DNA of 64,000 bases from Octopus bimaculoides (taxonomy: Eukaryota): NCBI RefSeq assembly GCF_001194135.2, contig NC_068983.1:117027925-117091924 (forward strand), read 5' to 3'. Shown piece after piece: positions 1-42,042 of the stretch; the first letter of the stretch is position 1, and every line of letters begins with the position of its first letter. The notes under the pieces are model-generated. The model saw only the letters and a list, made by a program, of their open reading frames with translations, searched no databases and was not told the origin of the DNA. A program made the position numbers and the translations under genes.

Positions 1-131
1 CAAGCCGTTTCAGAGATGTGCCATGGAATACGACATATTTCATATTATTAATCATGGCACTAATGAAGGGAGTGTGATGATTAATAATATGAAATATGTC
101 ATATTCCATGGGACATCTCTGAAACAGCCTG
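1..131. repeat. Imperfect inverted repeat (55-bp arms, 21-nt loop), hairpin/MITE-like; may be cut by the window edge
   Basis: 1-55 matches the reverse complement of 77-131 at 51/55 positions. Confidence 0.9.
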
Positions 132-877: not shown

Positions 878-1283
878 GTACTCCTTTACTCTTTTACTGG
901 TTTCAGTCATTTGACTACGGCCATGCTGGAGCACTGCCTTTAGTCGAGAAAATCGACCCCAGGACTTCTTCTTTGGAAGCCTAGTACTTATTCTATCGGT
1001 CTCTTTTTGCCGAACCGCTAAGTTACGGGGACGTAAACACACCAGCATCGGTTGTCAAGCGATGGTGGGGGGGACAAACACAGACACACAAATACACACA
1101 CATATATATATATACATATATACGACGGGCTTCTTTCAGTTTCCGTCTACCAAATCCACTCACAAGGCTTTGATCGGCCCGAAGCTATAGTAGAAGACAC
1201 TTGCTCAAGGTGCCACGCAGTGGGACTGAACCCGGAACCATGTGGTCGGTAAGCAAGCTACTTACCACACAGCCACTCCTGCA
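878..1283 (-). mobile_element. tRNA-derived SINE, family A (bipartite, internal CA/TA microsatellite)
   Basis: Minus strand starts with a tRNA-like head (TGGCTGTGTGG box A-like, GGTTCAGTCCC box B-like); homologous to 16935-17371, 51177-51760 and 60650-61050. Confidence 0.88.
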
Positions 1284-1292
1284 ACTATAGAA

Positions 1293-3660: not shown

Positions 3661-3689
3661 TGATGATTTCATAGATGAACTATTATTAT

Positions 3690-4130
3690 TATTATTGAAA
3701 GATACAAATATATTTTTTAATTCTCAACCTCGTTATAATGCTAACAAAATAACGTGGACAGGATAAATTATCTATACATTGCAGAAAAATACGTTACCAG
3801 CCAGCCAGCCATGAGACTCGAACTCACATCCATGTGATTACGTGTTAAGTGCTTTACCATTAAGCTAAACTTCCCAGTAACGAATTTTTTACAATTTTAG
3901 AACTTATAAATTTAGCTTCATAAAACGCTAACGTTAAATTCAACTTACGATGAAAGTAAACAAACAAAGTTTGTTTTAGAAGCGTTGAGATGTATTGAAA
4001 GATACAGAAATAATTTTTTTATTCATTAGCATTATCACGCGTTTGAGAATAAAAAAAAATTATTTCTGTATCTTTCGATATATCTCAACGCTTCTAAAAC
4101 AAACTTTGTTCATCGTAAGTTAAATTTAAC
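3690..4130. mobile_element. Foldback element with internal tRNA-like cassette, rearranged copy
   Basis: 3690-3920 is homologous to 30330-30553; 3932-4024 and 4043-4130 form a large imperfect palindrome of the outer arm. Confidence 0.75.
3804..3874 (-). tRNA. tRNA-Thr(CGT)-like sequence, non-canonical/pseudogenic
   Basis: Box A TAGCTTAATGG, D stem GCTT/AAGC, T stem GTGAG/CTCAT with TTCGAGT loop, T5 run just downstream; anticodon and acceptor stems partly broken, A at position 33. Confidence 0.5.
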
Positions 4131-4131
4131 A

Positions 4132-4300
4132 TTCTTCTTCTTCTTCTTCTTCTTCTTCTTCTTCTTCTTCTTCTTCTTCTTCTTCTTCTTCTTCTTCTTC
4201 TTCTTCTTCTTCTTCTTCTTCTTCTTCTTCTTCTTCTTCTTCTTCTTCTTCTTCTTCTTCTTCTTCTTCTTCTTCTTCTTCTTCTCCTTCTTCTTCTTAT
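4132..4300. repeat. (TTC)n microsatellite
   Basis: Long near-perfect TTC run read directly. Confidence 0.98.
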
Positions 4301-4549
4301 TCTTACTTTTAATCTGCATCTTTGTTACAGTCACTTGTTGAGACATAACCAGCGTGCTTGGGCGAGTGAAGAATAAGAGATGCTACAATGAGTGAAAGCT
4401 CGGGGAGAGGAGGTAGTGAAATAACTTCACGTAATACAACACAGAAATTTAAATAGATAGAGCTTCTCGTTTAAATATCTGTCTTGTATTACATGAAGAT
4501 ATTTTACTACTACTCATCCACAATTATTATTATCATTATTATTATTATT

Positions 4550-7539: not shown

Positions 7540-9075
7540 GAGATTTTGCAGTGGAGAAATGCACTGAGGTAATTTATGAAAATGAAGTAGAGTTCCTTGA
7601 AGTCAACACGAGGGAACTGGGCCTCCTCCTTAGACTAAGCTACGATAGTGACTATTTAGACGACCATGACCTCAGTAGATTCTGCCCCACCAGGTCACAG
7701 AGGGGAAGACCGCCCACCATCACCTCAGCAGTGAAGAAAAGCACCGCAGAGCGCTAGTGTGATTGGATCGTACCCACCCAAGACCCTGAAAGCAAACAGG
7801 TGAAAGGAATGATTGCACATGCAATAGGGGCTAGCGTAAGAACCACATAGTAAAGTTTAACAAGAAACTATACATGCAGATTCAAGGTGCAGCAATTGTT
7901 GTCGGTGTAGCTGGGATGTGGCCGGCCTCTTCATGAGCTGGTGGGACAGAAAACTTAAGCAATCCTTAGCAGAACAGTCCACAACTCTTCTACTTTACAG
8001 CAAGTATGTACACGATATCAATATCCTAGTTAAGACTAACTCTAGTAACCTTAATATAGAAACTGAGAGGAACATAAAGGAGAGCATCCAGCAAGTAGCT
8101 GACCCCATCTAGCAAAGTATCAAGGTAACTATAGATTACCCCACTAGGCACCCCAACAATAGACTACCCATCCTTGATACTGAACTTTGGTTAGAGACTG
8201 TGAACAACAGATTACAACTCCTCCACTCCTATTACATGAAACCCATAGCTTCGAAATATGTTGTTCATAAGAACTGAGCTTTGTCACACAACGTGAAAAT
8301 TGACATACTGATAGCAGGCTTAGTTAGGATAATGAGCAACGTGTCCCAACTATGCAATCCCTATGAAACGAAGAAACATGTACAGAACTTTATGTACCGC
8401 ATGCAGTTCTCTAGATATGATCAGAAAGATAGGGTTCGAGTATACAGGGGTGCTAGAAAGAAGTTAGAGAACATTATATGTAATGAAACCAGTGGTACCT
8501 ACCTGCCCCAGATATAGAAGAAAAGACTGCAATAGAAGACAAATAGCTTGCGACGAAACAAACAGGGTGAACACATGGTATAAAACCGACAAATATCAAG
8601 GAGTGATGTTTGTAGAGGCCGCAGCCTATGGAAAACTAGCCCGTAGATTTATGAAAGCTCCGAAAGAGACCAAACTCAACATTGAGATTGTTGAAAAGCC
8701 AGGGAACTCCATCAGATCACAACTATGTAGGACGTACCCCTTTGAGAATACCATATGCACCAATGATAACTGCATGCTATGTAGGATTAGCCCTGGCATT
8801 AACTGTATAACTAAAAATGTAGCCTACAGTATAACACGCATAGAAGGTGCTTGTAAAGACATGAACATGACATACATAGGAGAGACATCTTGAACATCTT
8901 GGACTCTTGGACATTGCGGAAAGACTAAATAAAAGAGTCCTTCCTACTCTAGCAACATGGAGACAACTTAACATCCGTATTTTATCCAAGCACCCAAAAG
9001 ACCCAAACCTCAGACAAATACAGGAGTATGTCCTCATAAATGAAACATCCCCGGTACTAAATAGGAAATATACAT
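7540..9075 (+). mobile_element. Decayed Penelope-like retroelement (RT + GIY-YIG endonuclease), Neptune-like by motif recall
   Basis: Fragments CPTRSQRGRPPTIT, YMQIQGAAI, LFMSWWDR, YSKYVHDIN, LPILD, YYMKP, VMFVEA, IVEKPG, CxxxxCxxC..CITKNVAY..YIGETS, RQIQEYVLI..LN; several stops and frameshifts. Confidence 0.88.
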
Positions 9076-27189: not shown

Positions 27190-27398
27190 CGGACAATTCT
27201 GGCTGAAACTATGCTAGGTATCTAATTAATGGTACTTCGTTTGCCGTTACGTTCTCAGTTCAAATTCAGCCGACGTCGTCTTTGCCTTCCATCCCTTCGG
27301 GGTTGATAAATTAAGTACCAGTAAAGCACAGGATTCGATTAGATCGACTCGTTCCCTTCCCCAAAATGGCTGTCCTTGTGGCAAAATTTGAAAATGAA
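27190..27398 (+). mobile_element. SINE family C
   Basis: CCGTTACGTTCTCAGTTCAAATTCAGCCGACGTCGTCTTTGCCTTCCATCC. Confidence 0.8.
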
Positions 27399-27399
27399 C

Positions 27400-29130
27400 T
27401 TGTTTTTATTAGCAAAAGAAAGTGAAAATGTTCTCTAGGGTGAAAAGTGAGATACTCTTTCCAATGAAAGATAAATGGATCAAATTTCAACAAGCAGTTC
27501 TTCAAATTTGTATTCATTTATTGAAAATGATAAACAGATTTCATATATTTCAATACTTATTGGAATCTAACATTAAGAAGGCATAACAACACAGCGCATA
27601 TTCTCATTTATGTAGGAGCCAAATTTTGCGTCGAGTATCAGTCTTGCATTTATTTCTCCTTTCAGAAAAATTCCACAACAATTCAATACCTTTTAGTGAC
27701 TCTGTGTCCAATATAGTATTTAGTCGACTCCAGAAAGTTTATAATTTACTTTATTTTCATTATTAATTACGTTTGTTTCTTATTCTGTTCATTTTCTACG
27801 AGAGCTTTTTCTCTGTTTGCGAAACAAAAAAAATTCACTTTTAGCTCTAGCACGGTAAACACTTTCACTTTCATGAAACAGTAAGACAAGCAAATAAAGA
27901 ATTTCAGTTTCTTGCTACCACTTTTTATTCTTTAATATTTTTTAAAACTTCTGCAAATTTTTTGTACAACTCATATTCTCAGTTATTATTATTGTTAAGT
28001 CGGCGAGCTGGCAGAGTCGTTAGCACGCTGGACGAAATGCTTAGTGGTATTTCGGCCGTTGCTACGTTTTGAGTTCACATTCCGCCTAGATCGATTTTGT
28101 CTTTCTTCCTTTCGGGCCGATAAATAAAGTACCGGTGAAACACTGGAGTCAATGTAGTCGACTCATCCGCTCCCCCTATTTTATGCCTTGTATCTTTTGT
28201 AGAAAGAAGTATTATTATTATTGAGGTGGCGAGCTAGCAGAATCACTAGCACGCCGGACAAAATACTTAGCGGTATTTCGTTCAAATTCCGCCGAAGTCG
28301 ACTTTACCTTTCATCCTAACGGGACCGATAAAATAAGTGCCAGTTGAGCACTGGAATCGATGTAATCGACTTAACCGTACACCCGAAATTGTTGGCCTTA
28401 TACCAAATTTTCAAACCATTGTTATTATTTATAAGATTTCTTTTAATTGAAATCAAAACATTTTCCTACAAAAAGCGCGTAAAGTTAAAGATATTCTTTT
28501 CAAAATAATTTTAAAAAAAACTTGTTTCTCTTAGCAAAAGAAAGCGGAAATGTTTTCCAGGGTGAAAAGTGAGATACTCTTTAAGATGAAGGATAAATGG
28601 ATCTGATATGAGCAAATAATTCTTCAAATTTGTATTCATTAATTGAAAATGATAAACAGATTTCATATATTTCAATACTTCTTGTAATCTAACATTAGGA
28701 AGGTATAACAACACAGCGCATATTCTCATTTATGTAGGAACCAAATTTTTGCGTCGAGTATCAGTGTTACATGTATTTCTCCTTTCAGAACAATTCCACA
28801 ACAATTCAATACCCTTTAGTGACTATGTATCCTATATAGTATTTAGTCAACTCCAGAAAGTTTATAATTCACTTTATTATCATTATTGATTACATTTGTT
28901 TCTTATTCCGTTCATTTTTACGAGAGCTTTTTCTCTGTTTGCAAAAATAAATATTTCACTGTTAGCTCTAGCACGGTAAACACTTTTACTTCGATGAAGC
29001 AGTAAGACAAGCAAGTAAAGAATTTCTTTTTCTTCTTACCATTTCTTATCCATTATTATTTTTTAACACTTCTACAAATTTTTTACACAGTTTTCTTATC
29101 TTTTAAAACTTCTGCAAATTTTGCACTAAA
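27400..29130. repeat. Diverged local direct duplication: ~570-bp unit at 27400-27965 and 28515-29090
   Basis: Colinear long identical blocks, e.g. TTCTTCAAATTTGTATTCATT and AACAACACAGCGCATATTCTCATTTATGTAGG. Confidence 0.92.
27997..28435 (+). mobile_element. Two head-to-tail SINE family C copies joined through (TTA)n
   Basis: GGCGAGCTGGCAGAGTCGTTAGCACG near 28001 and GGCGAGCTAGCAGAATCACTAGCACG near 28228, each preceded by TTA repeats. Confidence 0.88.
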
Positions 29131-29599: not shown

Positions 29600-30290
29600 G
29601 TCACAATAATTTCGAATAATATCTGAAAATAATATAATTGAGCAGATTCCTTTACTTGATTCGATGCACAAATTACTAACCCCGAGGGAAAGATATCGTT
29701 CTACTTCAAAATTTCTTTCTACTTTTACACAGAAATGGATCGCCAGAGTACGGTCGACTTTATATTCTTCATGCCATTGAAGATTCACAATACTTGACGG
29801 AGATAATACAATACTTGATAGAAATGCTGACTAAGGGCTTATTACCTGCTCGATTTGTTCCACAAATGAGACGAGGCAGTGGCCTCCAAATACCTGCACA
29901 GAGGCCTTTGTGTTTCTTCGTCTAAGTTACGGTAGCGTTCGAAGCACAGTTTTAGCGCTTATCTGAAAGCTTTCTTCTCGTTCTTTACTCGACATGTGTA
30001 GTTTATTACAAATTTATAATTTAAACCGTAGCTTTGTGAGTTCCATATAACCAAAGTTCCGTTCTTCAGAAAAACAAACGAAAAGCTGATAAAGAAAGCA
30101 GATTTACACAATTCCCTTAGGAGATTTAACTGAGGGTGCCGAGTAGACGGTATCTGATAACGTGGACCGTTCAGAATAAATGATAGTAATAAAAGTAAAA
30201 AAAAGACAAAGTATATTAAAACGGAACAGTACTACGGGAAACTTTATGTGGGGCATAGCTACAATATGAGAATATTCTGCCAGATTTACG
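29600..30290 (+). mobile_element. Highly degenerate REL-class LINE C-terminal region (possibly NeSL/HERO-like)
   Basis: Broken frame gives CSICSTNET...NTC (CCHC-knuckle-like), then LSYGSVRSTVLALI and TIPLGD; several stops. Confidence 0.35.
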
Positions 30291-30309
30291 CTTAAAATTT
30301 ATCATTGTT

Positions 30310-30612
30310 TTTTGTCTCGAAGCGTTGAGATGTATTGTAAGATAGAGAAATAAATTTATTTCTCAAACGCGTAATAATGCTATAAATAGCGTGGTCAGGA
30401 TAAATTATCCATATATTGCAGAAAAATACGTTACCGGTCAGCCATGAGACAGGAACTCACATCTCCGTGATTACATATCAAGTGTTTTACAATTAAACCA
30501 AACTGCCCAGAAACGAATTCATCTGTAATTTTAGAACTTATAAATTTAGCTTCTTTCTGCATTATATGGATAATTTATCCTGATCACGCTATTTATAGAA
30601 TTATCACGCGTT
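30310..30612. mobile_element. Foldback element with internal tRNA-like cassette; right arm runs into a gap
   Basis: 30366-30424 vs reverse complement of 30554-30612 are 55/59 identical; homologous to 3690-4130. Confidence 0.85.
30436..30507 (-). tRNA. tRNA-Thr(TGT)-like sequence, non-canonical/pseudogenic
   Basis: Acceptor GGCAGTT/GGCTGAC 6/7 paired, D stem GTTT/AAAC, anticodon stem 4/5, T stem GTGAG/CTCAT; T loop altered (TTCCTGT), A33; T5 run downstream. Confidence 0.5.
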
Positions 30613-31100
30613 NNNNNNNNNNNNNNNNNNNNNNNNNNNNNNNNNNNNNNNNNNNNNNNNNNNNNNNNNNNNNNNNNNNNNNNNNNNNNNNNNNNNNNNN
30701 NNNNNNNNNNNNNNNNNNNNNNNNNNNNNNNNNNNNNNNNNNNNNNNNNNNNNNNNNNNNNNNNNNNNNNNNNNNNNNNNNNNNNNNNNNNNNNNNNNNN
30801 NNNNNNNNNNNNNNNNNNNNNNNNNNNNNNNNNNNNNNNNNNNNNNNNNNNNNNNNNNNNNNNNNNNNNNNNNNNNNNNNNNNNNNNNNNNNNNNNNNNN
30901 NNNNNNNNNTCATTGTTTTCGAAGATTTCAAATTCTATTCTCAGAAATGGCCATGAGCTAGCGGTCTATACCATCCCTTATTTCCTTTTGTCCTGAAAAA
31001 CACTGAATGGAACTTCTTTCCTTTTTCCTCTCACTTTCTTGGTTTTGCTTTTTTGGGTTTACAAATTCTGTAAATAGTCATTCCTTTATTATTGCCTTTA

Positions 31101-31455
31101 GGAGTTGCAATGGCCCAGTGGTTAGGGCAGCGGACTCGCGGTCATAGGATTGCGGCTTCGATTCCCAGACCGGGCGTTGTGAGTGTTTATTGAGCGAAAA
31201 CACCTAAAGCTCCACGAGGCGCCGGCAGAGGATGGTGGTGAACCCTGATGTACTCTTCCACTCTTACTTCATGTTTCTGTTGTGCCTGTAATTCAAAGAG
31301 TCAATCTTCTCATACTGTGTGACGCTGAATATCCCCGAGAACTACGTTAAGGGTACACGTGTCTGTGGAGTGCTCAGCCACTTGCACGTTAATTTCACGA
31401 GCAGGCTGTTCCGTTGATCGGATCAACTTGAAACCGCGACGGAGTGCCAACAACA
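31101..31455 (+). mobile_element. SINE family B
   Basis: Colinear with 13089-13462, with small deletions. Confidence 0.9.
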
Positions 31456-33457: not shown

Positions 33458-33783
33458 AATGGCACTCCGGCGGTTAGGACGACGAGTGTTCCAGTTGATC
33501 CAATCAACGGGACAGCCTGCTTGTGAAATTAACATGCAAGTTGTTGAGCACCCCAAAGACACGCGTACATTTATCGCAGTTCTCAGGGAGATTCACCATG
33601 ACTCAGCATATAACTATGCCAGCCCTTTCAAATATAGGTACTACTCATTTTTTGCCGGGTGAGTGAAGTAGGACAGCGTGAAATATAGTGTCACGCTCAA
33701 GAACACGTCGCACTGCCGGTTTTAGAACTCACGACCTTACAATTATAAGCAGAATACGGTAACCACTAAGCCACAGCCTTCAC
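33458..33783 (-). mobile_element. tRNA-derived SINE sharing the family B 3' half but with a different central domain
   Basis: Minus strand: TGGCTTAGTGGTT head, TTCTTGAGCGTGACACTATATTTCACG..AAAAATGAGTA centre, then the family B-like tail ending GGAGTGCCA. Confidence 0.8.
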
Positions 33784-35134: not shown

Positions 35135-35344
35135 TGTGTGTGTGTGTACGTTTGTGTGTCCGTGCCCCCCCCCACCATTGCTTTACAACCGATGGTGGTG
35201 TGTTTACGTCCCCGTAACTTAGCTGTTTGGCAAAAGGGTCCGATAGAATAAGTACTAGGCTTAGAAAGAGTAAGTCCTGGAATCGATTCGTTCGACTAAA
35301 CGTGGTGCTCCAGCATGACAAATGTCTGAAAGAAATAAAACAAC

Positions 35345-36749: not shown

Positions 36750-38782
36750 ATAGTAGTGTTGCTTTTAGCACGTACTATCACTACACTACAGAGCGCAGCC
36801 TTGTGTGACTTGGGCATGTGTTGTGGTTTGTTGTGATGCTTTTTCTTTTAATGTATTGAAAGTGTTTTACGTAGGATATGTGTAGCGCTTAGTGGTGCTA
36901 TTTTCTGTATGTTATATATACTTGTCAGTCCTGGTGTTTTTGTTATGCACTTGTTTTTAAATGTTTTTATCCTACCTAATGCGCCTACTATGATAGGAAG
37001 TATTTCTGCTTTTAAACTCCACATTCGAGTTACCTCTATTTCCAGATCTTTGTATTTTGAAAGTTTATCCGTTTCTTTTAGAGAAACATTGTCAACTGTT
37101 GGTATTGATACATCGATTAGAAAGCCTTTTTGTTCTTGGTGATCTCTGACAACCATATCCGGCGTATTGTGTGTATTAGCAAATTCCAGAATATGGCTGC
37201 TTTTTCATTTTCTGTGACCTTTTCTGGCATATGCCTATACCATTTTTTTCGCTTGTTATTCCATAGTGTTGGCATAGGTTCCAATGTATATAGATTCCAA
37301 CTCTATCGTGTCTTTGAATATATTGCTTTTTTTAGCCAGGACTAGGCAGCCAGAGACAATGTGATTTATTGTTTCTCGTACATCTCCACATATTCAGCAG
37401 TTACTTGTATTTCTTTTCATTGCATGTTTTTAGTAATTTCGGGTGGGAAGGCTTTCATCTTGCACTGCAATTAAGAATTCTTCAGTGTCTGCTTTGTGTC
37501 CTGTGCTTCTCAGCCATTGTTAGGATTTTACTTTGTCTATTTCTTTTCTGTTTAGTTCAACCCGGCATTTGACATGAAAGGGCTTTTCTTGTCATTGTTT
37601 TATCACAATCCGTTGCTGCTTCAGTTTCAAGTCGGATTTCAGTTGTTTTTGTTGTTCCTTTTTTTTTTTTCTTCATAATTGTTAGGCACTATGATTTCTT
37701 TTTTGTATTTGTTCTCTTCCTTAAAGTGGCATTTGTATTAGTTTTCCTTGCTTCTGATGTAGGCATTTCTGTAGTCTTATGATCGTTATTTTGTAATAGC
37801 GTTCTAGCTGTATAAGGCCACTACCACCTTCGATGCGTTGTATATATAACCTTTCTATGTCAAATTTTTTGTGGTGCATCTTAAATCCTGTTATTATTTT
37901 TCTTGTTTTCCTGTCTATTTTGATTAGTTCATTTAGAGTCCAGTTAAGAATACTGTAGCTGCAACTTATAACTGGGACGAGTGGAGTGTTGACACGTATT
38001 ATCTTGCCTTTCGCATTGAGAACTGTTTTCTATATAAATCTAACTCGTCTATAGTGTTCTTTTCTTATCTTCTCTTTCATTGGTGTGGCATGTATCTAGT
38101 TTATTGATTCCTAAGTATGTGTATGTCTGGCTTTGGTCTAATTGTCTTATCTCATTTGCTTTATCTAGTGTGATGTTGCTACTCTTAACTAGTTTTCCTC
38201 TTTTAAAGGTAGCTTTGGTACATTTTTCTAAGCCAAAATTCATGTGCATTTCTTTGGTAAATTCATGTACGGTCTGTAGTACTGTTTCCAGCTGGTTATC
38301 ATTTGTAGCATAGTTTTAGCTCATCCATATATAAGAGGTGGCTGATTGTTTTGCCGTAACAGTTGTATCCACATCCTGTTCTGATAAAGGTGTCAGTGCC
38401 AAGCAGAAAAGGAGTGGAGAGAGCGTGTCTCCCTGGAATATTTCTCTTCTAATGGGGATGGCTCTGGTTTTTATGAGTCCCTCTTTTGTCTGGCGCTGTA
38501 GCACTGTCTGCCATTTATTCATGGAATGTTTTATATATTCCATGATGATTGGTGCGATCTTGTTCATGGCTGGTGTTTCGAGGATTTATGTGTGGAGAAT
38601 ACTATTAAAAGCCTTTCGGTAATCGATCGAGGCCATATTTTGACCCTTCTTATTTCCGCGTTTGTTTTTGTTATGGATTTATTAATAAGTAACTGATCTT
38701 TACAGCCGCATAAGCCCTTGCAGCATACCTTCTGCTCTTCTGGAAATAGGCTGTATTCTTCCAGATGTTTGCTCATAATCGG
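36750..38782 (-). mobile_element. R4/Dong-like LINE, 5'-truncated and decayed (copy A)
   Basis: CKDQLLINK, IFQGDTLSPLLFCLALTPLS, MNFGLEKC, FLIDVSIP..KLSKYKDLEIE..PIIVGALG..HILRKTLS; TTA tracts at both ends. Confidence 0.93.
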
Positions 38783-38799
38783 TATTATTATTATTATGT

Positions 38800-39005
38800 A
38801 AGGTGGTTAGCAGGCAGAATCGTTAGCACGCTGTACGAAATGCTTAGCGGTATTTCGCCCGTCTTTACGTTCTGAGTTGAAATTCCGCTGAGGTCGAATC
38901 TACCTTTCATTCTCTCGGAATCGATAAAATAAGGACCAATGAAACACTGGGGTCGATGTAATTGACTCATCCCCTCCCCAAAAATTGTGGCAACATTTTT
39001 GAGAC

Positions 39006-39006
<1 letters not shown>
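38800..39006 (+). mobile_element. SINE family C with (ATT)n tail at 39007-39057
   Basis: GCAGAATCGTTAGCACGC..GAAATGCTTAGCGGTATTTCG..GTTCTGAGTTGAAATTCCGCTGAGGTCGA. Confidence 0.9.
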
Positions 39007-39057
<51 letters not shown>

Positions 39058-39058
<1 letters not shown>

Positions 39059-42042
39059 CTTCGTAAAACAGTGTAGGAAAAATTGCACCGAAGACCTTAG
39101 TCATCTGTCAAGTCACAACAAGGACCTCAGATAGATAATACTTTCCTTAAGATGTGTGCTGTACCCAATAAGGCTGCTTTTTGCAAGACATCAATCTTGC
39201 ATGGAATTTCCAGTTTTCTTAAGAAGTTTTGTAGTTTCAATGGGATTGAACCCAAAGCTCCGATCACCAGTGGTATCACTTTTACATTACCTTCTCGCAT
39301 TCCATACAGCCTTGCTATTTCCATTTTCAATTCGGAGTACTCGGTGATTTTTTTCCACCTCTTTACTCACAAACGTTCATGTAATTTGGTATGACTACAT
39401 CAATGATCTGGCAATATTTGTCTCTCTTATTCAATATGATAAAATCCGGCCGATGGTGTTCGATTACACGATCCGTCTGAAAATCAAGGTCCCAGAGTAT
39501 CGTTACTTTTCCATCCTCCTGCATGACTTTACTTGGTACATGCTCATGCCATTTCTTTGTTACTTCGTATTGGTATTTAAGGTATAAAAGCCAATGAAGA
39601 TCCACACACACACTTTATCGTGGCGACGCTTGTATTCTTTTTGTGCAAGGCTCTCACATCCACTTACCAAGTGGGTCACATTTTCCACACTCTTTCCACA
39701 GAGTCTGCATTTATGGGTGTCAGAAGTTTTATAGATGTTATGCTTCACTGAATTCGTAGCGAGGGCCTGGTCTTGTGCAGCAATGATTAAGCCTTCCGTG
39801 GTACGCTTCAAATAACCTCGCTGAAGCCATGCCCACGATGCTGTATTATCCTTAACGTCTTGTCTTGTGTACCCCTTTCAAACTCTCCATGCCTTCTCAT
39901 TTTCAAGAAGCTCTTCCTTTCTCTTCTCCTCAGCTCTTTGGTTAAACTCTGTCTCGTCCATCATTTCATCTGCATTTACACCCATATCTTTCGCGGAATA
40001 TTGCAGCAGCTCTTCTTCATCACTATTTTTCAAATACTCGGCAAGCGTTCTCCTTTCACTCCTTTCACTCTATACTAATTAGTCCTCTGCCACCCTTCTT
40101 AGTTTTCATATACAGTCTGTTTATGTTTGCTCTAGAGTGTAGCGCCCCATGCAGCGTCATCAACTTTCTCGTCCTTCTATCCAGAGATGATATTTCCTCC
40201 TTAGTCCATTTGAGGATTGACGCACTGTATCTGACTACCGCAACTGCCCAGATATTCATTCCGGTAATCAAAGTTTTGGCATTCAGGTTGGATTTCAACA
40301 CCATCTTCACCCTTTATTGATACACCTCGCTGACCTTGACTTTCATTTCTCTGTGTAGAATGTCATCCAACTCCATAATCCCTAAATATCTCTACCCACT
40401 ACCGTAGCGTTCACCCATGGTCTCTCCTGATGGTAACTGCAATCCTCTGCAGGCTGCTTTCTTCCCTCTTTTCGCATTAACTACTGAGCATTTGGTAATA
40501 CCAAATTCAATACCGATGTCCCTACCAAACTTCAGGTTATCCATAAACAGAAGATGGGTCAATGATGAGCCTTTCTTCCCACATCGGTAACCCATCTTAA
40601 CTTTCCTAAGTGTCATTTTTTATGGGTATTAGTGTAATTACAAATAATAACGAAGAAAAAGAGTCACCTTGGAAGATTCCCCTTTTAACACTAACTTCTC
40701 CAATGAATACATTACTTGAGTACAATATGGTTTTCCACTCTTTCATGCTATGCATCAGAAAATTTATGATGTCAGCAACATCAAATATCTGCAGGCATTC
40801 AATGATCCAAGAATGAGGCACCGTATCATATGCCTTCTTAAAGACAATCCAAGCCATAGACATGTTTGTATGATGTTTTCTACAATGCCTCAAAACTGTT
40901 TTATCGATGACCAGGTGATCCTTGGTACCCTGAGAACTCTTCCTACATCTTTTTTGTTCCCGTGGTTGTATTTCTTCCTGTGCCAGGTAAGTCTATATCT
41001 TTGCCGCACATATTCCAGTGAGTATCTTCCAGATTCCGTTTAGGCATGCTATGGGACGGTAGTTACCCACTATATTCCCCTTTCTTGTATCTTTCATTAC
41101 AAGTGTTGTCCTCCCTGTCACCATCCATCTCTAATTTTTCTCGATCGGTCTTTTTCCTATTTTTCCAGTTTCCTCCTAAACATTGCTCAGTTTTTCCTAG
41201 ATCTTGCTTTGACCGCATTATGTCCCTTTCACCGTGGTTCTTTTGCTCCACCATGTTTCGTTCTCTTAAGTTGTAATTTCTCCTCAGCAAGTAGCGCAAT
41301 AGCTTGGAGAAGATTCCTTGTTTGTGTTATGTCCTCCGTTAAATCCTACTCATATCTACCCTTCTCATATTCATGAGGATTTTTTTTCTTCTGGAGCGTT
41401 CATCTAATCGGTAAGTCGTCTTCGAATTTCAAGCAATTCGTTATCTAGTTGGTTCATTTCCCCTGAATGTCCACCCACCACAGTATCAGGGTTCAGTTCA
41501 CTGTATAAAGTTCCTGTTCCTCATCCTTAACAGCCCCATAACCATTCCCCTGCTCCTCCTGTCTACTCTTCTCCCTGCTTTCAACTCCTACCTCTCTGTT
41601 TTCAACTCCGACCATCCTTTGTAGCCCATCCGCAGGGTCTCTCAGACACTCACTAATCCGAGATACTTCTACTCGAGTTAAGTAATCCTTCCTCCTAATC
41701 ACTCTCATTTATTTTCTTACATTGGACACATGTCATTTTCCTTCCAAAATTTCAAGGTACGTCGGCCTACTCAGTGACTTATTTTCAGCTTTGCTCTTTA
41801 ATGACATTCAATGAGTGTATCGTACTCTTCCTTCGTCTAGTTATGTCTGTTTTTGCGCATACCGTGTATGTGATCTGTTGTGACATAACGACCGTCCGAG
41901 GTCAGATCACTGCTGCGGGCGGTTTCGTACGTACCGGGTGGGAAACCTTCATCATGAGCAGCTATAGCTACATTCTTGTTGTTAATTCTTTCCTTGTGTT
42001 GCATCATGATTTCATGAGTCGTTCGTGGGGTTCCCACGAAAG
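39058..42042 (-). mobile_element. R4/Dong-like LINE, near end-to-end but internally deleted and decayed (copy B): N-terminal region, RT, CCHC, REL
   Basis: KKAYDTVPHSWI, RGIFQGDSFS, HLLFMDNLK, GGRGLISIE, CRLCGKSVENVTHLVSGC..KRRHDKV, RPDFIIL..IIDVVIP, PLVIGALG..LLGTAHILRKVLSI; TTA at both junctions. Confidence 0.95.

What the first reader, a model, noticed from the sequence alone, without database searches (positions are those of the whole stretch)
30310..30612. Foldback element whose inverted arms enclose a complete tRNA-Thr-like Pol III cassette with its own terminator
Seen in sequence: 59-bp arms (55/59 identical, running into the gap) bracket a 129-nt spacer. On the minus strand the spacer holds a 71-nt cloverleaf (acceptor 6/7, D stem 4/4, anticodon stem 4/5, T stem 5/5), followed within about 8 nt by a T5 run that overlaps the inner end of the arm. 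A second copy at 3690-4130 has the same layout. Between the copies the D stem shows a paired change (C11-G24 vs T11-A24), the anticodon is CGT vs TGT (both Thr), and both have a non-canonical A33. Established knowledge: SINE heads normally read through into a body, and MITEs normally lack Pol III units. Inference: this is either a TIR transposon that captured and disperses a tRNA-like gene, or a tRNA-lookalike ncRNA family insulated by DNA hairpins.
Basis: partly seen in the sequence, partly recalled or inferred. Interest (0 to 1): 0.78.

Follow-up and report, generated by a model that had tools for sequence, protein, structure and literature searches.

The report
Octopus foldback repeat carrying tRNA fossil
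A real hairpin-shaped repeat in an octopus genome encloses a worn-down tRNA-Thr-like sequence; it looks like a decayed small mobile DNA element with a tRNA-derived passenger, and nothing tested here points to a working RNA gene.

Summary
Arms 30366-30424 and 30554-30612 are 59 nt and 93% complementary, with a 129-nt loop. The right arm stops at an assembly gap. On the minus strand the loop holds a tRNA-like cloverleaf (30436-30507) followed by T5.

The tRNA resemblance is below threshold. Rfam tRNA scores 25.7 and 25.3 bits against a cut-off of 29, and ARAGORN at default settings finds nothing. The RNA does not fold better than shuffled sequence.

Between the two copies the tRNA-like part is the most diverged module (79%, against 82-87% for its neighbours). 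Copy 2 has one compensated pair and three broken pairs. One compensated pair is expected by chance 29% of the time.

The 59-nt arms are the inner part of a longer terminal inverted repeat. That repeat is shared with copy 2 and with a short foldback deletion derivative at 3933-4130. Copy 2 does not have quite the same layout: the inner 40 nt of its right arm are replaced.

The window is octopus DNA. No further copies could be reached.

Best reading: a non-autonomous foldback or MITE-like DNA element with a tRNA(Thr)-gene-derived passenger, now decayed. Family-wide claims remain untested.

The parts
30292..30365 (.). Outer part of the left terminal inverted repeat of copy 1 (module A plus a shortened outer module X). 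It contains a small local palindrome at 30345-30364.
   Evidence: 30314-30356 is homologous to both arms of the short foldback (3975-4019 and 4055-4098), by nhmmer and blastn. The outer limit near 30292 is inferred by eye from 'ACG(C)TTAA(A)ATTT' shared with the termini at 3930 and 4133, and is uncertain.
30366..30424 (.). Left inner arm (module B) of copy 1.
   Evidence: 59 nt, 93% complementary to 30554-30612. It is 82% identical to copy 2 at 3729-3787.
30422..30426 (-). T5 run on the minus strand, 9 nt downstream of the tRNA-like end. This is the first run of four or more T after the tRNA-like start, so it is a possible Pol III terminator.
   Evidence: Read directly. The 21-nt stretch GGTAACGTATTTTTCTGCAAT is identical in both copies.
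30436..30507 (-). tRNA-Thr(TGT)-like sequence of 72 nt, degenerate.
   Evidence: Rfam tRNA 25.7 bits (gathering score 29), E 0.0023 for a 313-nt search, model positions 1-71. ARAGORN calls it only at the relaxed threshold. The minimum-energy fold is not a cloverleaf and z = +1.2.
30508..30553 (-). 46-nt leader upstream of the tRNA-like start, shared by both copies. It contains an A/T-rich TTTATAAG at about -37 to -30.
   Evidence: 87% identical to copy 2, with the first 27 nt identical. The TATA-like reading is inference only, in a genome of 33% G+C.
30554..30612 (.). Right inner arm (B') of copy 1, cut by the assembly gap.
30613..30909 (.). Assembly gap (297 N) that should hide the outer part of the right terminal repeat and the right boundary.
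   Evidence: gap list. That the missing arm lies here is inference from the symmetry seen in copy 2.
3693..3787 (.). Copy 2 left arm (truncated A plus B), preceded by (ATT)5.
   Evidence: Collinear with 30333-30424. 3693-3744 is complementary to 4026-4080 (pairs I3 and I5, 85-86%).
3788..3919 (-). Copy 2 spacer: leader, tRNA-Thr(CGT)-like sequence at 3803-3874, then T5.
   Evidence: 82% identical to 30425-30553. Rfam tRNA 25.3 bits. By eye, box A is TAGCTTAATGG and box B is AGTTCGAGTCT, both close to consensus.
3933..4130 (.). Short foldback made of the outer terminal modules only (X A, 19 nt of B', A' X'). It reads as an internal-deletion derivative, or as the rearranged right end of copy 2. 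It is followed by (TTC)58.
   Evidence: Arms 3963-4020 / 4053-4110 are 97% complementary and 3930-3954 / 4109-4133 are 92%.

Best explanation
This is a decayed copy of a small, non-coding, non-autonomous DNA repeat of the MITE or foldback type in an octopus genome.

Structure. The unit has long terminal inverted repeats and a loop of about 130 nt. The loop descends from a tRNA-Thr gene with its own short trailer and T-run. The total would be about 400-450 bp.

How it spreads (inferred). The unit would be copied or moved as DNA, with its inverted ends recognised by a transposase supplied in trans. The tRNA-derived piece rides along as a passenger.

State of the passenger. The tRNA-like module is not needed for spread. 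A derivative that has lost the loop keeps the termini. The module is not under detectable constraint in the two copies seen.

Shown here: the foldback anatomy, its modular sharing among three loci with unrelated flanks, and the sub-threshold but full-length tRNA likeness.

Inferred: DNA-level mobility, tRNA-gene origin, and present inactivity.
For: - The foldback is real and far beyond chance.
- The same modules occur at three places with unrelated flanks: two spacers, three B arms and three A modules.
- In copy 2 the outer module pairs across the element (3693-3744 with 4026-4080), so the inverted repeat is longer than 59 nt.
- The short foldback at 3933-4130 keeps the termini (arms 97% alike) but lacks B and the loop. 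This is the usual pattern of deletion derivatives in TIR families.
- Homology between copies starts 46 nt upstream of the tRNA-like 5' end and runs on through the arm. A Pol III retrocopy starting at +1 would not give this.
- A T5 run 9 nt after the tRNA-like end is the layout of a tRNA gene, not of a SINE head.
- The tRNA model matches end to end in both copies. Two abundant SINE-like repeats of the same window give no tRNA match at E <= 1.
- Signs of decay: the tRNA-like module is 79% identical between copies, against 87% for the leader and 82% for the arm. Copy 2 has three broken pairs for one compensated pair. There is no stable fold. Copy 1 has poor A and B boxes (read by eye).
- The arms of copy 1 differ by only 7% although its boxes are already poor. 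Its source copy was therefore probably degenerate too (inference).
- The host is an octopus, whose genome is rich in repeats. At least four other non-microsatellite hairpins lie in the same 64 kb.
Against: - No target-site duplication could be found. The right end of copy 1 lies in a gap, and copy 2 is flanked by microsatellites and rearranged.
- No transposase-bearing relative with the same ends was seen.
- Only two copies of the loop were available, so 'family' rests on very few loci.
- No copy was found in 40 kb of Octopus vulgaris DNA.
- tRNA origin rests on a sub-threshold score. At genome scale (about 2.7 Gb) a 25.7-bit match would be expected a few times by chance (my scaling of the E-value). 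ARAGORN's relaxed call is not above chance.
Confidence: 0.55

Rival explanations
1. A live Pol III unit. The family carries a transcribable tRNA-like gene (upstream A/T-rich box, A and B boxes, T5 terminator) whose RNA has a function. Alternatively its transcription helps the element, and the hairpin arms act as boundaries.
For: - Copy 2 has near-consensus A and B boxes (read by eye).
- Both copies keep the T5 and have no earlier T4 run.
- The leader (27 nt) and trailer (21 nt) contain stretches identical between copies.
- One compensated D-stem pair.
Against: - The tRNA-like part is the most diverged module.
- Copy 2 has three pair-breaking changes.
- The compensated pair is expected by chance with P = 0.29.
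- Fold energies are no better than shuffles.
- Both copies have A33 instead of the near-universal U33.
- Box B of copy 1 lacks the G57 and A58 consensus bases.
- By my estimate, identical runs of 21-27 nt at 82% identity are expected about 0.2-0.6 times in 230 nt.
- No expression data were available.
Confidence: 0.1
2. A retroposon. The unit is a tRNA-derived SINE (or a retrocopied tRNA pseudogene), and the palindromes come from later inverted duplication or from insertion into an existing hairpin.
For: - Octopus genomes are rich in tRNA-derived SINEs (Ohshima and Okada 1994, as cited in PMC4824008).
- SINE-like repeats fill this window.
- Copy 2 abuts simple repeats, (ATT)5 and (TTC)58, of the kind some SINE tails carry.
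Against: - 46 nt upstream of the tRNA-like start are shared by both copies.
- A T5 run 9 nt after the head would stop Pol III before any body.
- There is no A-rich tail or direct duplication at the loop borders (read).
- The loop has no similarity to the other repeats of the window.
Confidence: 0.1
3. A chance cloverleaf. The loop is ordinary A/T-rich spacer of a foldback repeat and is not derived from a tRNA at all.
For: - Scores are below Rfam's cut-off.
- ARAGORN at default finds nothing. At the relaxed setting, random sequence gives 0.6 calls per 60 kb.
The two copies are homologous, so they count as one observation.
Against: - The covariance model aligns all 71 positions with the conserved tRNA landmarks in place (U8, A14, G18G19 in copy 2, G53 T54 T55 C56, C61).
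- For the tRNA model alone over the whole window the E-value scales to about 1e-4.
- In-register pairing is 83%, against 31-50% when partners are slid.
- A T-run follows at the distance typical of tRNA genes.
Confidence: 0.15
4. An assembly artefact. The inverted duplicate next to the gap was created by the assembler.
For: - The right arm ends exactly at a gap.
- The same assembly shows a 480-bp block repeated at 100% identity across a 10-N gap at 57914-58393 / 58404-58883.
Against: - The arms differ at 4 of 59 positions and lie in one uninterrupted stretch of called bases.
- Copy 2 and the short foldback independently show the same inverted organisation away from any gap.
Confidence: 0.03

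Closest known systems
MITEs and other non-autonomous TIR DNA transposons with long inverted ends
   Same: Small and non-coding, with terminal inverted repeats. It folds into a strong DNA hairpin, occurs at dispersed sites with unrelated flanks, and has a deletion derivative that keeps the ends.
   Different: No target-site duplication, superfamily or autonomous partner could be established. The loop holds a tRNA-like unit, which MITEs normally lack.
MER6/MER6A, a Tc1/mariner MITE that carries an embedded V-SINE fragment (PMC6887750)
   Same: A composite: a TIR element spreads a piece of Pol III-related retroposon or small-RNA origin as a passenger.
   Different: According to that paper, MER6 carries a SINE that lost its tRNA head. 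Here the passenger is the tRNA-like part itself with a T-run and has no SINE body. MER6 has 24-bp TIRs and TA duplications, whereas here the inverted repeats are 59 nt or more and the duplication is unknown.
TRIMp3 elements: Cassandra, Helenus and Ajax, non-autonomous LTR retrotransposons with tRNA- or 5S-derived sequences (PMC10886601)
   Same: [quoted passage not shown]
   Different: Those have direct LTRs, a primer-binding site and a polypurine tract, and they move through RNA. Here the repeats are inverted, with one tRNA-like copy in the loop.
tRNA-derived SINEs of octopus (OK, OR1, OR2; Ohshima and Okada 1994, cited in PMC4824008)
   Same: A tRNA-related sequence with A and B box-like motifs inside an interspersed repeat of the same host group.
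   Different: The tRNA-like part is not at the 5' end of the repeat unit. A T5 run follows it at once, and no body or tail was found.
tRNA pseudogenes and nuclear tRNA look-alikes
   Same: A sub-threshold cloverleaf, the non-canonical A33, decayed stems and a retained downstream T-run.
   Different: It is embedded in, and copied together with, a long inverted repeat.

Membership tests
Functional tRNA gene | Detected by tRNA models at their normal thresholds | tested here: not met
   Rfam RF00005 gives 25.7 and 25.3 bits against a gathering score of 29. There are no hits at gathering threshold in the window. ARAGORN at default finds 0.
Functional tRNA gene | Canonical cloverleaf with U33 and a stable fold | tested here: not met
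   Both copies have A33. The G2 pair is mismatched in both, and the anticodon stem is 4/5 in copy 1 and 2/5 in copy 2. The minimum-energy fold is not a cloverleaf, with z = +1.2 and +0.6.
Functional tRNA gene | Internal A and B boxes and a downstream T-run | tested here: inconclusive
   Copy 2 is near consensus, and copy 1 is degraded at several consensus positions (by eye). T5 is present in both copies.
tRNA-derived SINE | The tRNA-related head forms the 5' end of the repeat unit | tested here: not met
   Homology between copies extends 46 nt upstream of the head, and in copy 1 into the arm.
tRNA-derived SINE | The head reads through into a body and a LINE-like or simple-repeat tail, with flanking duplications | tested here: not met
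   T5 lies 9 nt after the head. No tail or duplication is seen at the loop borders. Only two copies were examined.
MITE / non-autonomous TIR DNA transposon | Terminal inverted repeats | tested here: met
MITE / non-autonomous TIR DNA transposon | Short, with no coding capacity | tested here: met
   All six frames of 30290-30612 and 3680-4135 are broken by stops. The inferred length is about 400-450 bp.
MITE / non-autonomous TIR DNA transposon | Many dispersed copies at independent sites | tested here: inconclusive
   There are 2-3 loci in 64 kb with unrelated flanks and none in 40 kb of O. vulgaris. The host genome could not be searched.
MITE / non-autonomous TIR DNA transposon | Target-site duplication of fixed length at the outer ends | tested here: inconclusive
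   The right end of copy 1 lies in the gap. The short foldback is flanked by (TTC)58. TTAA lies 3 nt inside all three visible termini, but the conserved bases continue outside it (by eye).
MITE / non-autonomous TIR DNA transposon | An autonomous relative with the same ends | not testable with these tools
   No eukaryotic genome or repeat library (Repbase, Dfam) was on hand.
Foldback (FB-type) elements | Long inverted arms built of tandem sub-repeats | tested here: not met
   There are no direct-repeat families in 30000-31000. The arms are unique sequence.
TRIMp3 (Helenus/Cassandra type) | Direct LTRs each holding the small-RNA-like sequence, plus a primer-binding site and polypurine tract | tested here: not met
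   The repeats are inverted, with a single tRNA-like copy in the loop.

The most novel reading that the evidence does not exclude
Octopus genomes may hold a family of TIR or foldback DNA transposons whose loop is a complete, transcribable Pol III tRNA-like unit (upstream A/T box, A and B boxes, own terminator). That would be a DNA-transposon counterpart of the LTR-type TRIMp3 elements. It would disperse short Pol III genes or boundary-like tDNA modules around the genome.
Probability: 0.12. Interest if true: 0.55.

Novelty: new variant of a known kind. Interest (0 to 1): 0.27.

Why it matters
If the architecture proves to be a real, multi-copy family, it would show that DNA transposons can spread tRNA-like Pol III modules, as SINEs and LTR-type TRIMs are already known to do. 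That matters for three reasons:
- tRNA gene prediction, because it would be a source of false tRNA calls in cephalopod genomes.
- Repeat annotation of octopus assemblies.
- Ideas about tDNA-like boundary elements being seeded by mobile DNA.

On the evidence available here it is an ordinary decayed repeat with an unusual passenger.

Tried and rejected
Reaching more copies (all failed):
- Exact-pattern scans with the trailer, T-arm, leader and outer-arm motifs found nothing in metagenome contigs, prokaryotic genomes or viral contigs.
- I tried to reach more octopus DNA through proteins. An RT-fragment query gave only non-octopus ENA contigs.
- A SINE-derived ORF gave two O. vulgaris loci, L002 and L003, 40 kb in all, with no copy of the element.
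- A concatenated query of repeat-derived ORFs gave one O. bimaculoides UniRef protein that is not on record with DNA.
- A window ORF was not on record either.

Other dead ends:
- A whole-window Rfam scan at a permissive E-value was swamped by microsatellite 'miRNA' matches and did not list the tRNA rows.
- The search for the missing right arm after the gap found only a 10-15 nt match in the wrong orientation, no better than shuffles.
- A TTAA or TA target duplication was considered and not accepted, because the conserved terminal bases continue outside the TTAA.
- Helitron or DINE-like and TRIM readings were considered and dropped for lack of their defining features.
- Literature searches found no described TIR element with a tRNA-like loop.

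Full report
**What is there**

The window is eukaryotic: 33% G+C, 17 N-gaps and many microsatellites. It comes from an octopus.
- A repeat-derived ORF at 60399-61022 matches 'Hypothetical predicted protein [Octopus vulgaris]'.
- Another query hit an O. bimaculoides UniRef entry.
- The window's SINE-like repeats are 84-91% identical to copies in two O. vulgaris chromosome loci.

**The foldback**

At the reported coordinates, arms 30366-30424 and 30554-30612 are 59 nt long and 93% complementary, with 129 nt between them. The right arm stops at the gap 30613-30909. As single-stranded DNA the region folds at -62.7 kcal/mol, against -25 for shuffles (z = -10.6). The four mismatches between the arms argue against an assembly artefact. 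So does the same organisation at a second locus away from any gap.

**The tRNA-like piece**

On the minus strand the loop reads in this order:
- a 46-nt leader;
- a 72-nt tRNA-like sequence (30507 to 30436);
- 9 nt of trailer;
- a T5 run.

Rfam's tRNA model aligns over all 71 positions but scores 25.7 bits, below its gathering score of 29. Copy 2 (3874 to 3803) scores 25.3 bits. ARAGORN finds no tRNA in the window at default settings. At a 90% threshold it calls copy 1 as tRNA-Thr(TGT), but simulated sequence gives 0.6 such calls per 60 kb.

Copy 2 is worse, with acceptor 5/7 and anticodon stem 2/5. Both copies have A33. Neither RNA folds into a cloverleaf as its minimum-energy structure, and both are no more stable than shuffles.

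Two abundant SINE-like repeats in the same window give no tRNA match at E <= 1. The module is therefore more tRNA-like than its repeat neighbours. I accept a tRNA-Thr origin as probable but not proven.

**Is the RNA under constraint?**

Between the two copies the modules differ as follows:

| Module | Identity between copies |
|---|---|
| Leader | 87% |
| Inner arm (B) | 82% |
| tRNA-like part | 79% |

- Of the 15 differences in the tRNA-like part, six fall in stem columns.
- Two of them form the compensated D-stem pair. Three break pairs in copy 2. One lies in a pair that is mismatched in both copies.
- A simulation gives P = 0.29 for at least one compensated pair by chance.
- With two sequences the shuffle control is uninformative, with 231 of 500 shuffles reaching the observed value.

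There is no evidence of selection on the structure.

**The larger element**

The 59-nt arms are only the inner part (B) of a longer inverted terminus.
- An outer module A (30314-30356) recurs in both arms of a short foldback at 3933-4130. That foldback's arms are 97% alike over 58 nt.
- In copy 2 the left end (3693-3744) pairs with 4026-4080.
- The short foldback consists of outer modules X and A, 19 nt of B', then A' and X'. It has the termini without most of B and without the loop, as expected of an internal-deletion derivative.
- Copy 2 is collinear with copy 1 over the left arm plus loop (3693-3919 vs 30333-30553, 82%). The inner 40 nt of its right arm are missing, and 106 nt of other palindromic sequence intervene.
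- Flanks of the copies are unrelated.
- The two arms of copy 1 differ by 7%, while the copies differ by 18%. This suggests that copy 1 was made from an already degenerate source (inference).

**What it most likely is**

I read it as a small non-coding element of the MITE or foldback type that moves or is copied as DNA through its inverted ends. It carries a tRNA-Thr-gene-derived fossil in its loop.
- The shared upstream leader and the immediate T5 argue against a SINE.
- The T5 at tRNA-gene distance suggests capture of a tRNA gene rather than of a SINE head.
- Mobility is inferred, not shown. No target-site duplication, empty site or autonomous partner could be established.
- A TTAA near all three visible termini is a lead only, because the conserved bases continue outside it.

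**Comparison with known elements**
- MER6 is a mariner-type MITE carrying a headless V-SINE (PMC6887750).
- Cassandra, Helenus and Ajax are LTR-type elements that carry 5S- or tRNA-derived sequences judged unlikely to encode functional RNA (PMC10886601).
- I found no described TIR element with a tRNA-like unit in its loop.

This is best called a new variant of a known kind, on thin evidence.

**Limits**

No octopus genome could be searched.
- Scans of metagenome, viral and prokaryotic collections found nothing.
- The 40 kb of O. vulgaris DNA that I could fetch hold no copy.
- Copy number, whether the loop is always arm-enclosed, the consensus score, family-wide covariation and expression all remain untested.

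Noticed in passing
window 57914-58393 and 58404-58883: A 480-bp block is repeated at 100% identity on either side of a 10-N gap. This is most likely a redundant-overlap assembly artefact.
   Followed up: partly
window 879-1290, 60632-61059, 17166-17370, 35140-35317: These are copies of an abundant SINE-like repeat, 84-91% identical to copies in Octopus vulgaris chromosomes OX597836.1 and OX597820.1. This is what identified the host.
   Followed up: partly
window 31090-31450, 13094-13442, 54350-54709, 33489-33595: A second SINE-like family, about 87% identical among copies, starts with a tRNA-like 'GGCCCAGTGGTTAGGGC...GGCTTCGATTCCC' head. It gives no Rfam tRNA match at E <= 1.
   Followed up: partly
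window 38000-41000, minus strand: A decayed non-LTR retrotransposon. The ORF fragment 40609-40992 matches RVT_1 (E 1e-7), and 39563-39877 weakly matches zf-RVT.
   Followed up: partly
window 8483-8893: A 136-aa ORF ends in '...YIGETS', which is reminiscent of a GIY-YIG endonuclease of Penelope-like elements. It has no Pfam match and is not on record in the protein-to-contig index.
   Followed up: partly
window 1-131, 1352-1515, 4413-4510: Three further non-microsatellite hairpins, unrelated to the element studied: arms of 61 nt at 90%, 73 nt at 79% and 41 nt at 88%. Foldback-shaped repeats are common in this stretch.
   Followed up: no
window 27385-27963 and 28507-29084: Two direct copies of a 580-bp sequence, 89% identical and about 540 bp apart. 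Their nature is unknown.
   Followed up: no
window 4132-4304 and 3682-3697: A (TTC)58 microsatellite directly abuts the right end of the short foldback, and (ATT)5 abuts the left end of copy 2. Whether microsatellites are linked to this family's termini is open.
   Followed up: no
window 30910-30924: The first 15 nt after the gap, TCATTGTTTTCGAAG, resemble the X/A junction of the element in left-arm (direct) orientation. The score is no better than shuffles. It could hint at a rearranged right end, as in copy 2.
   Followed up: partly
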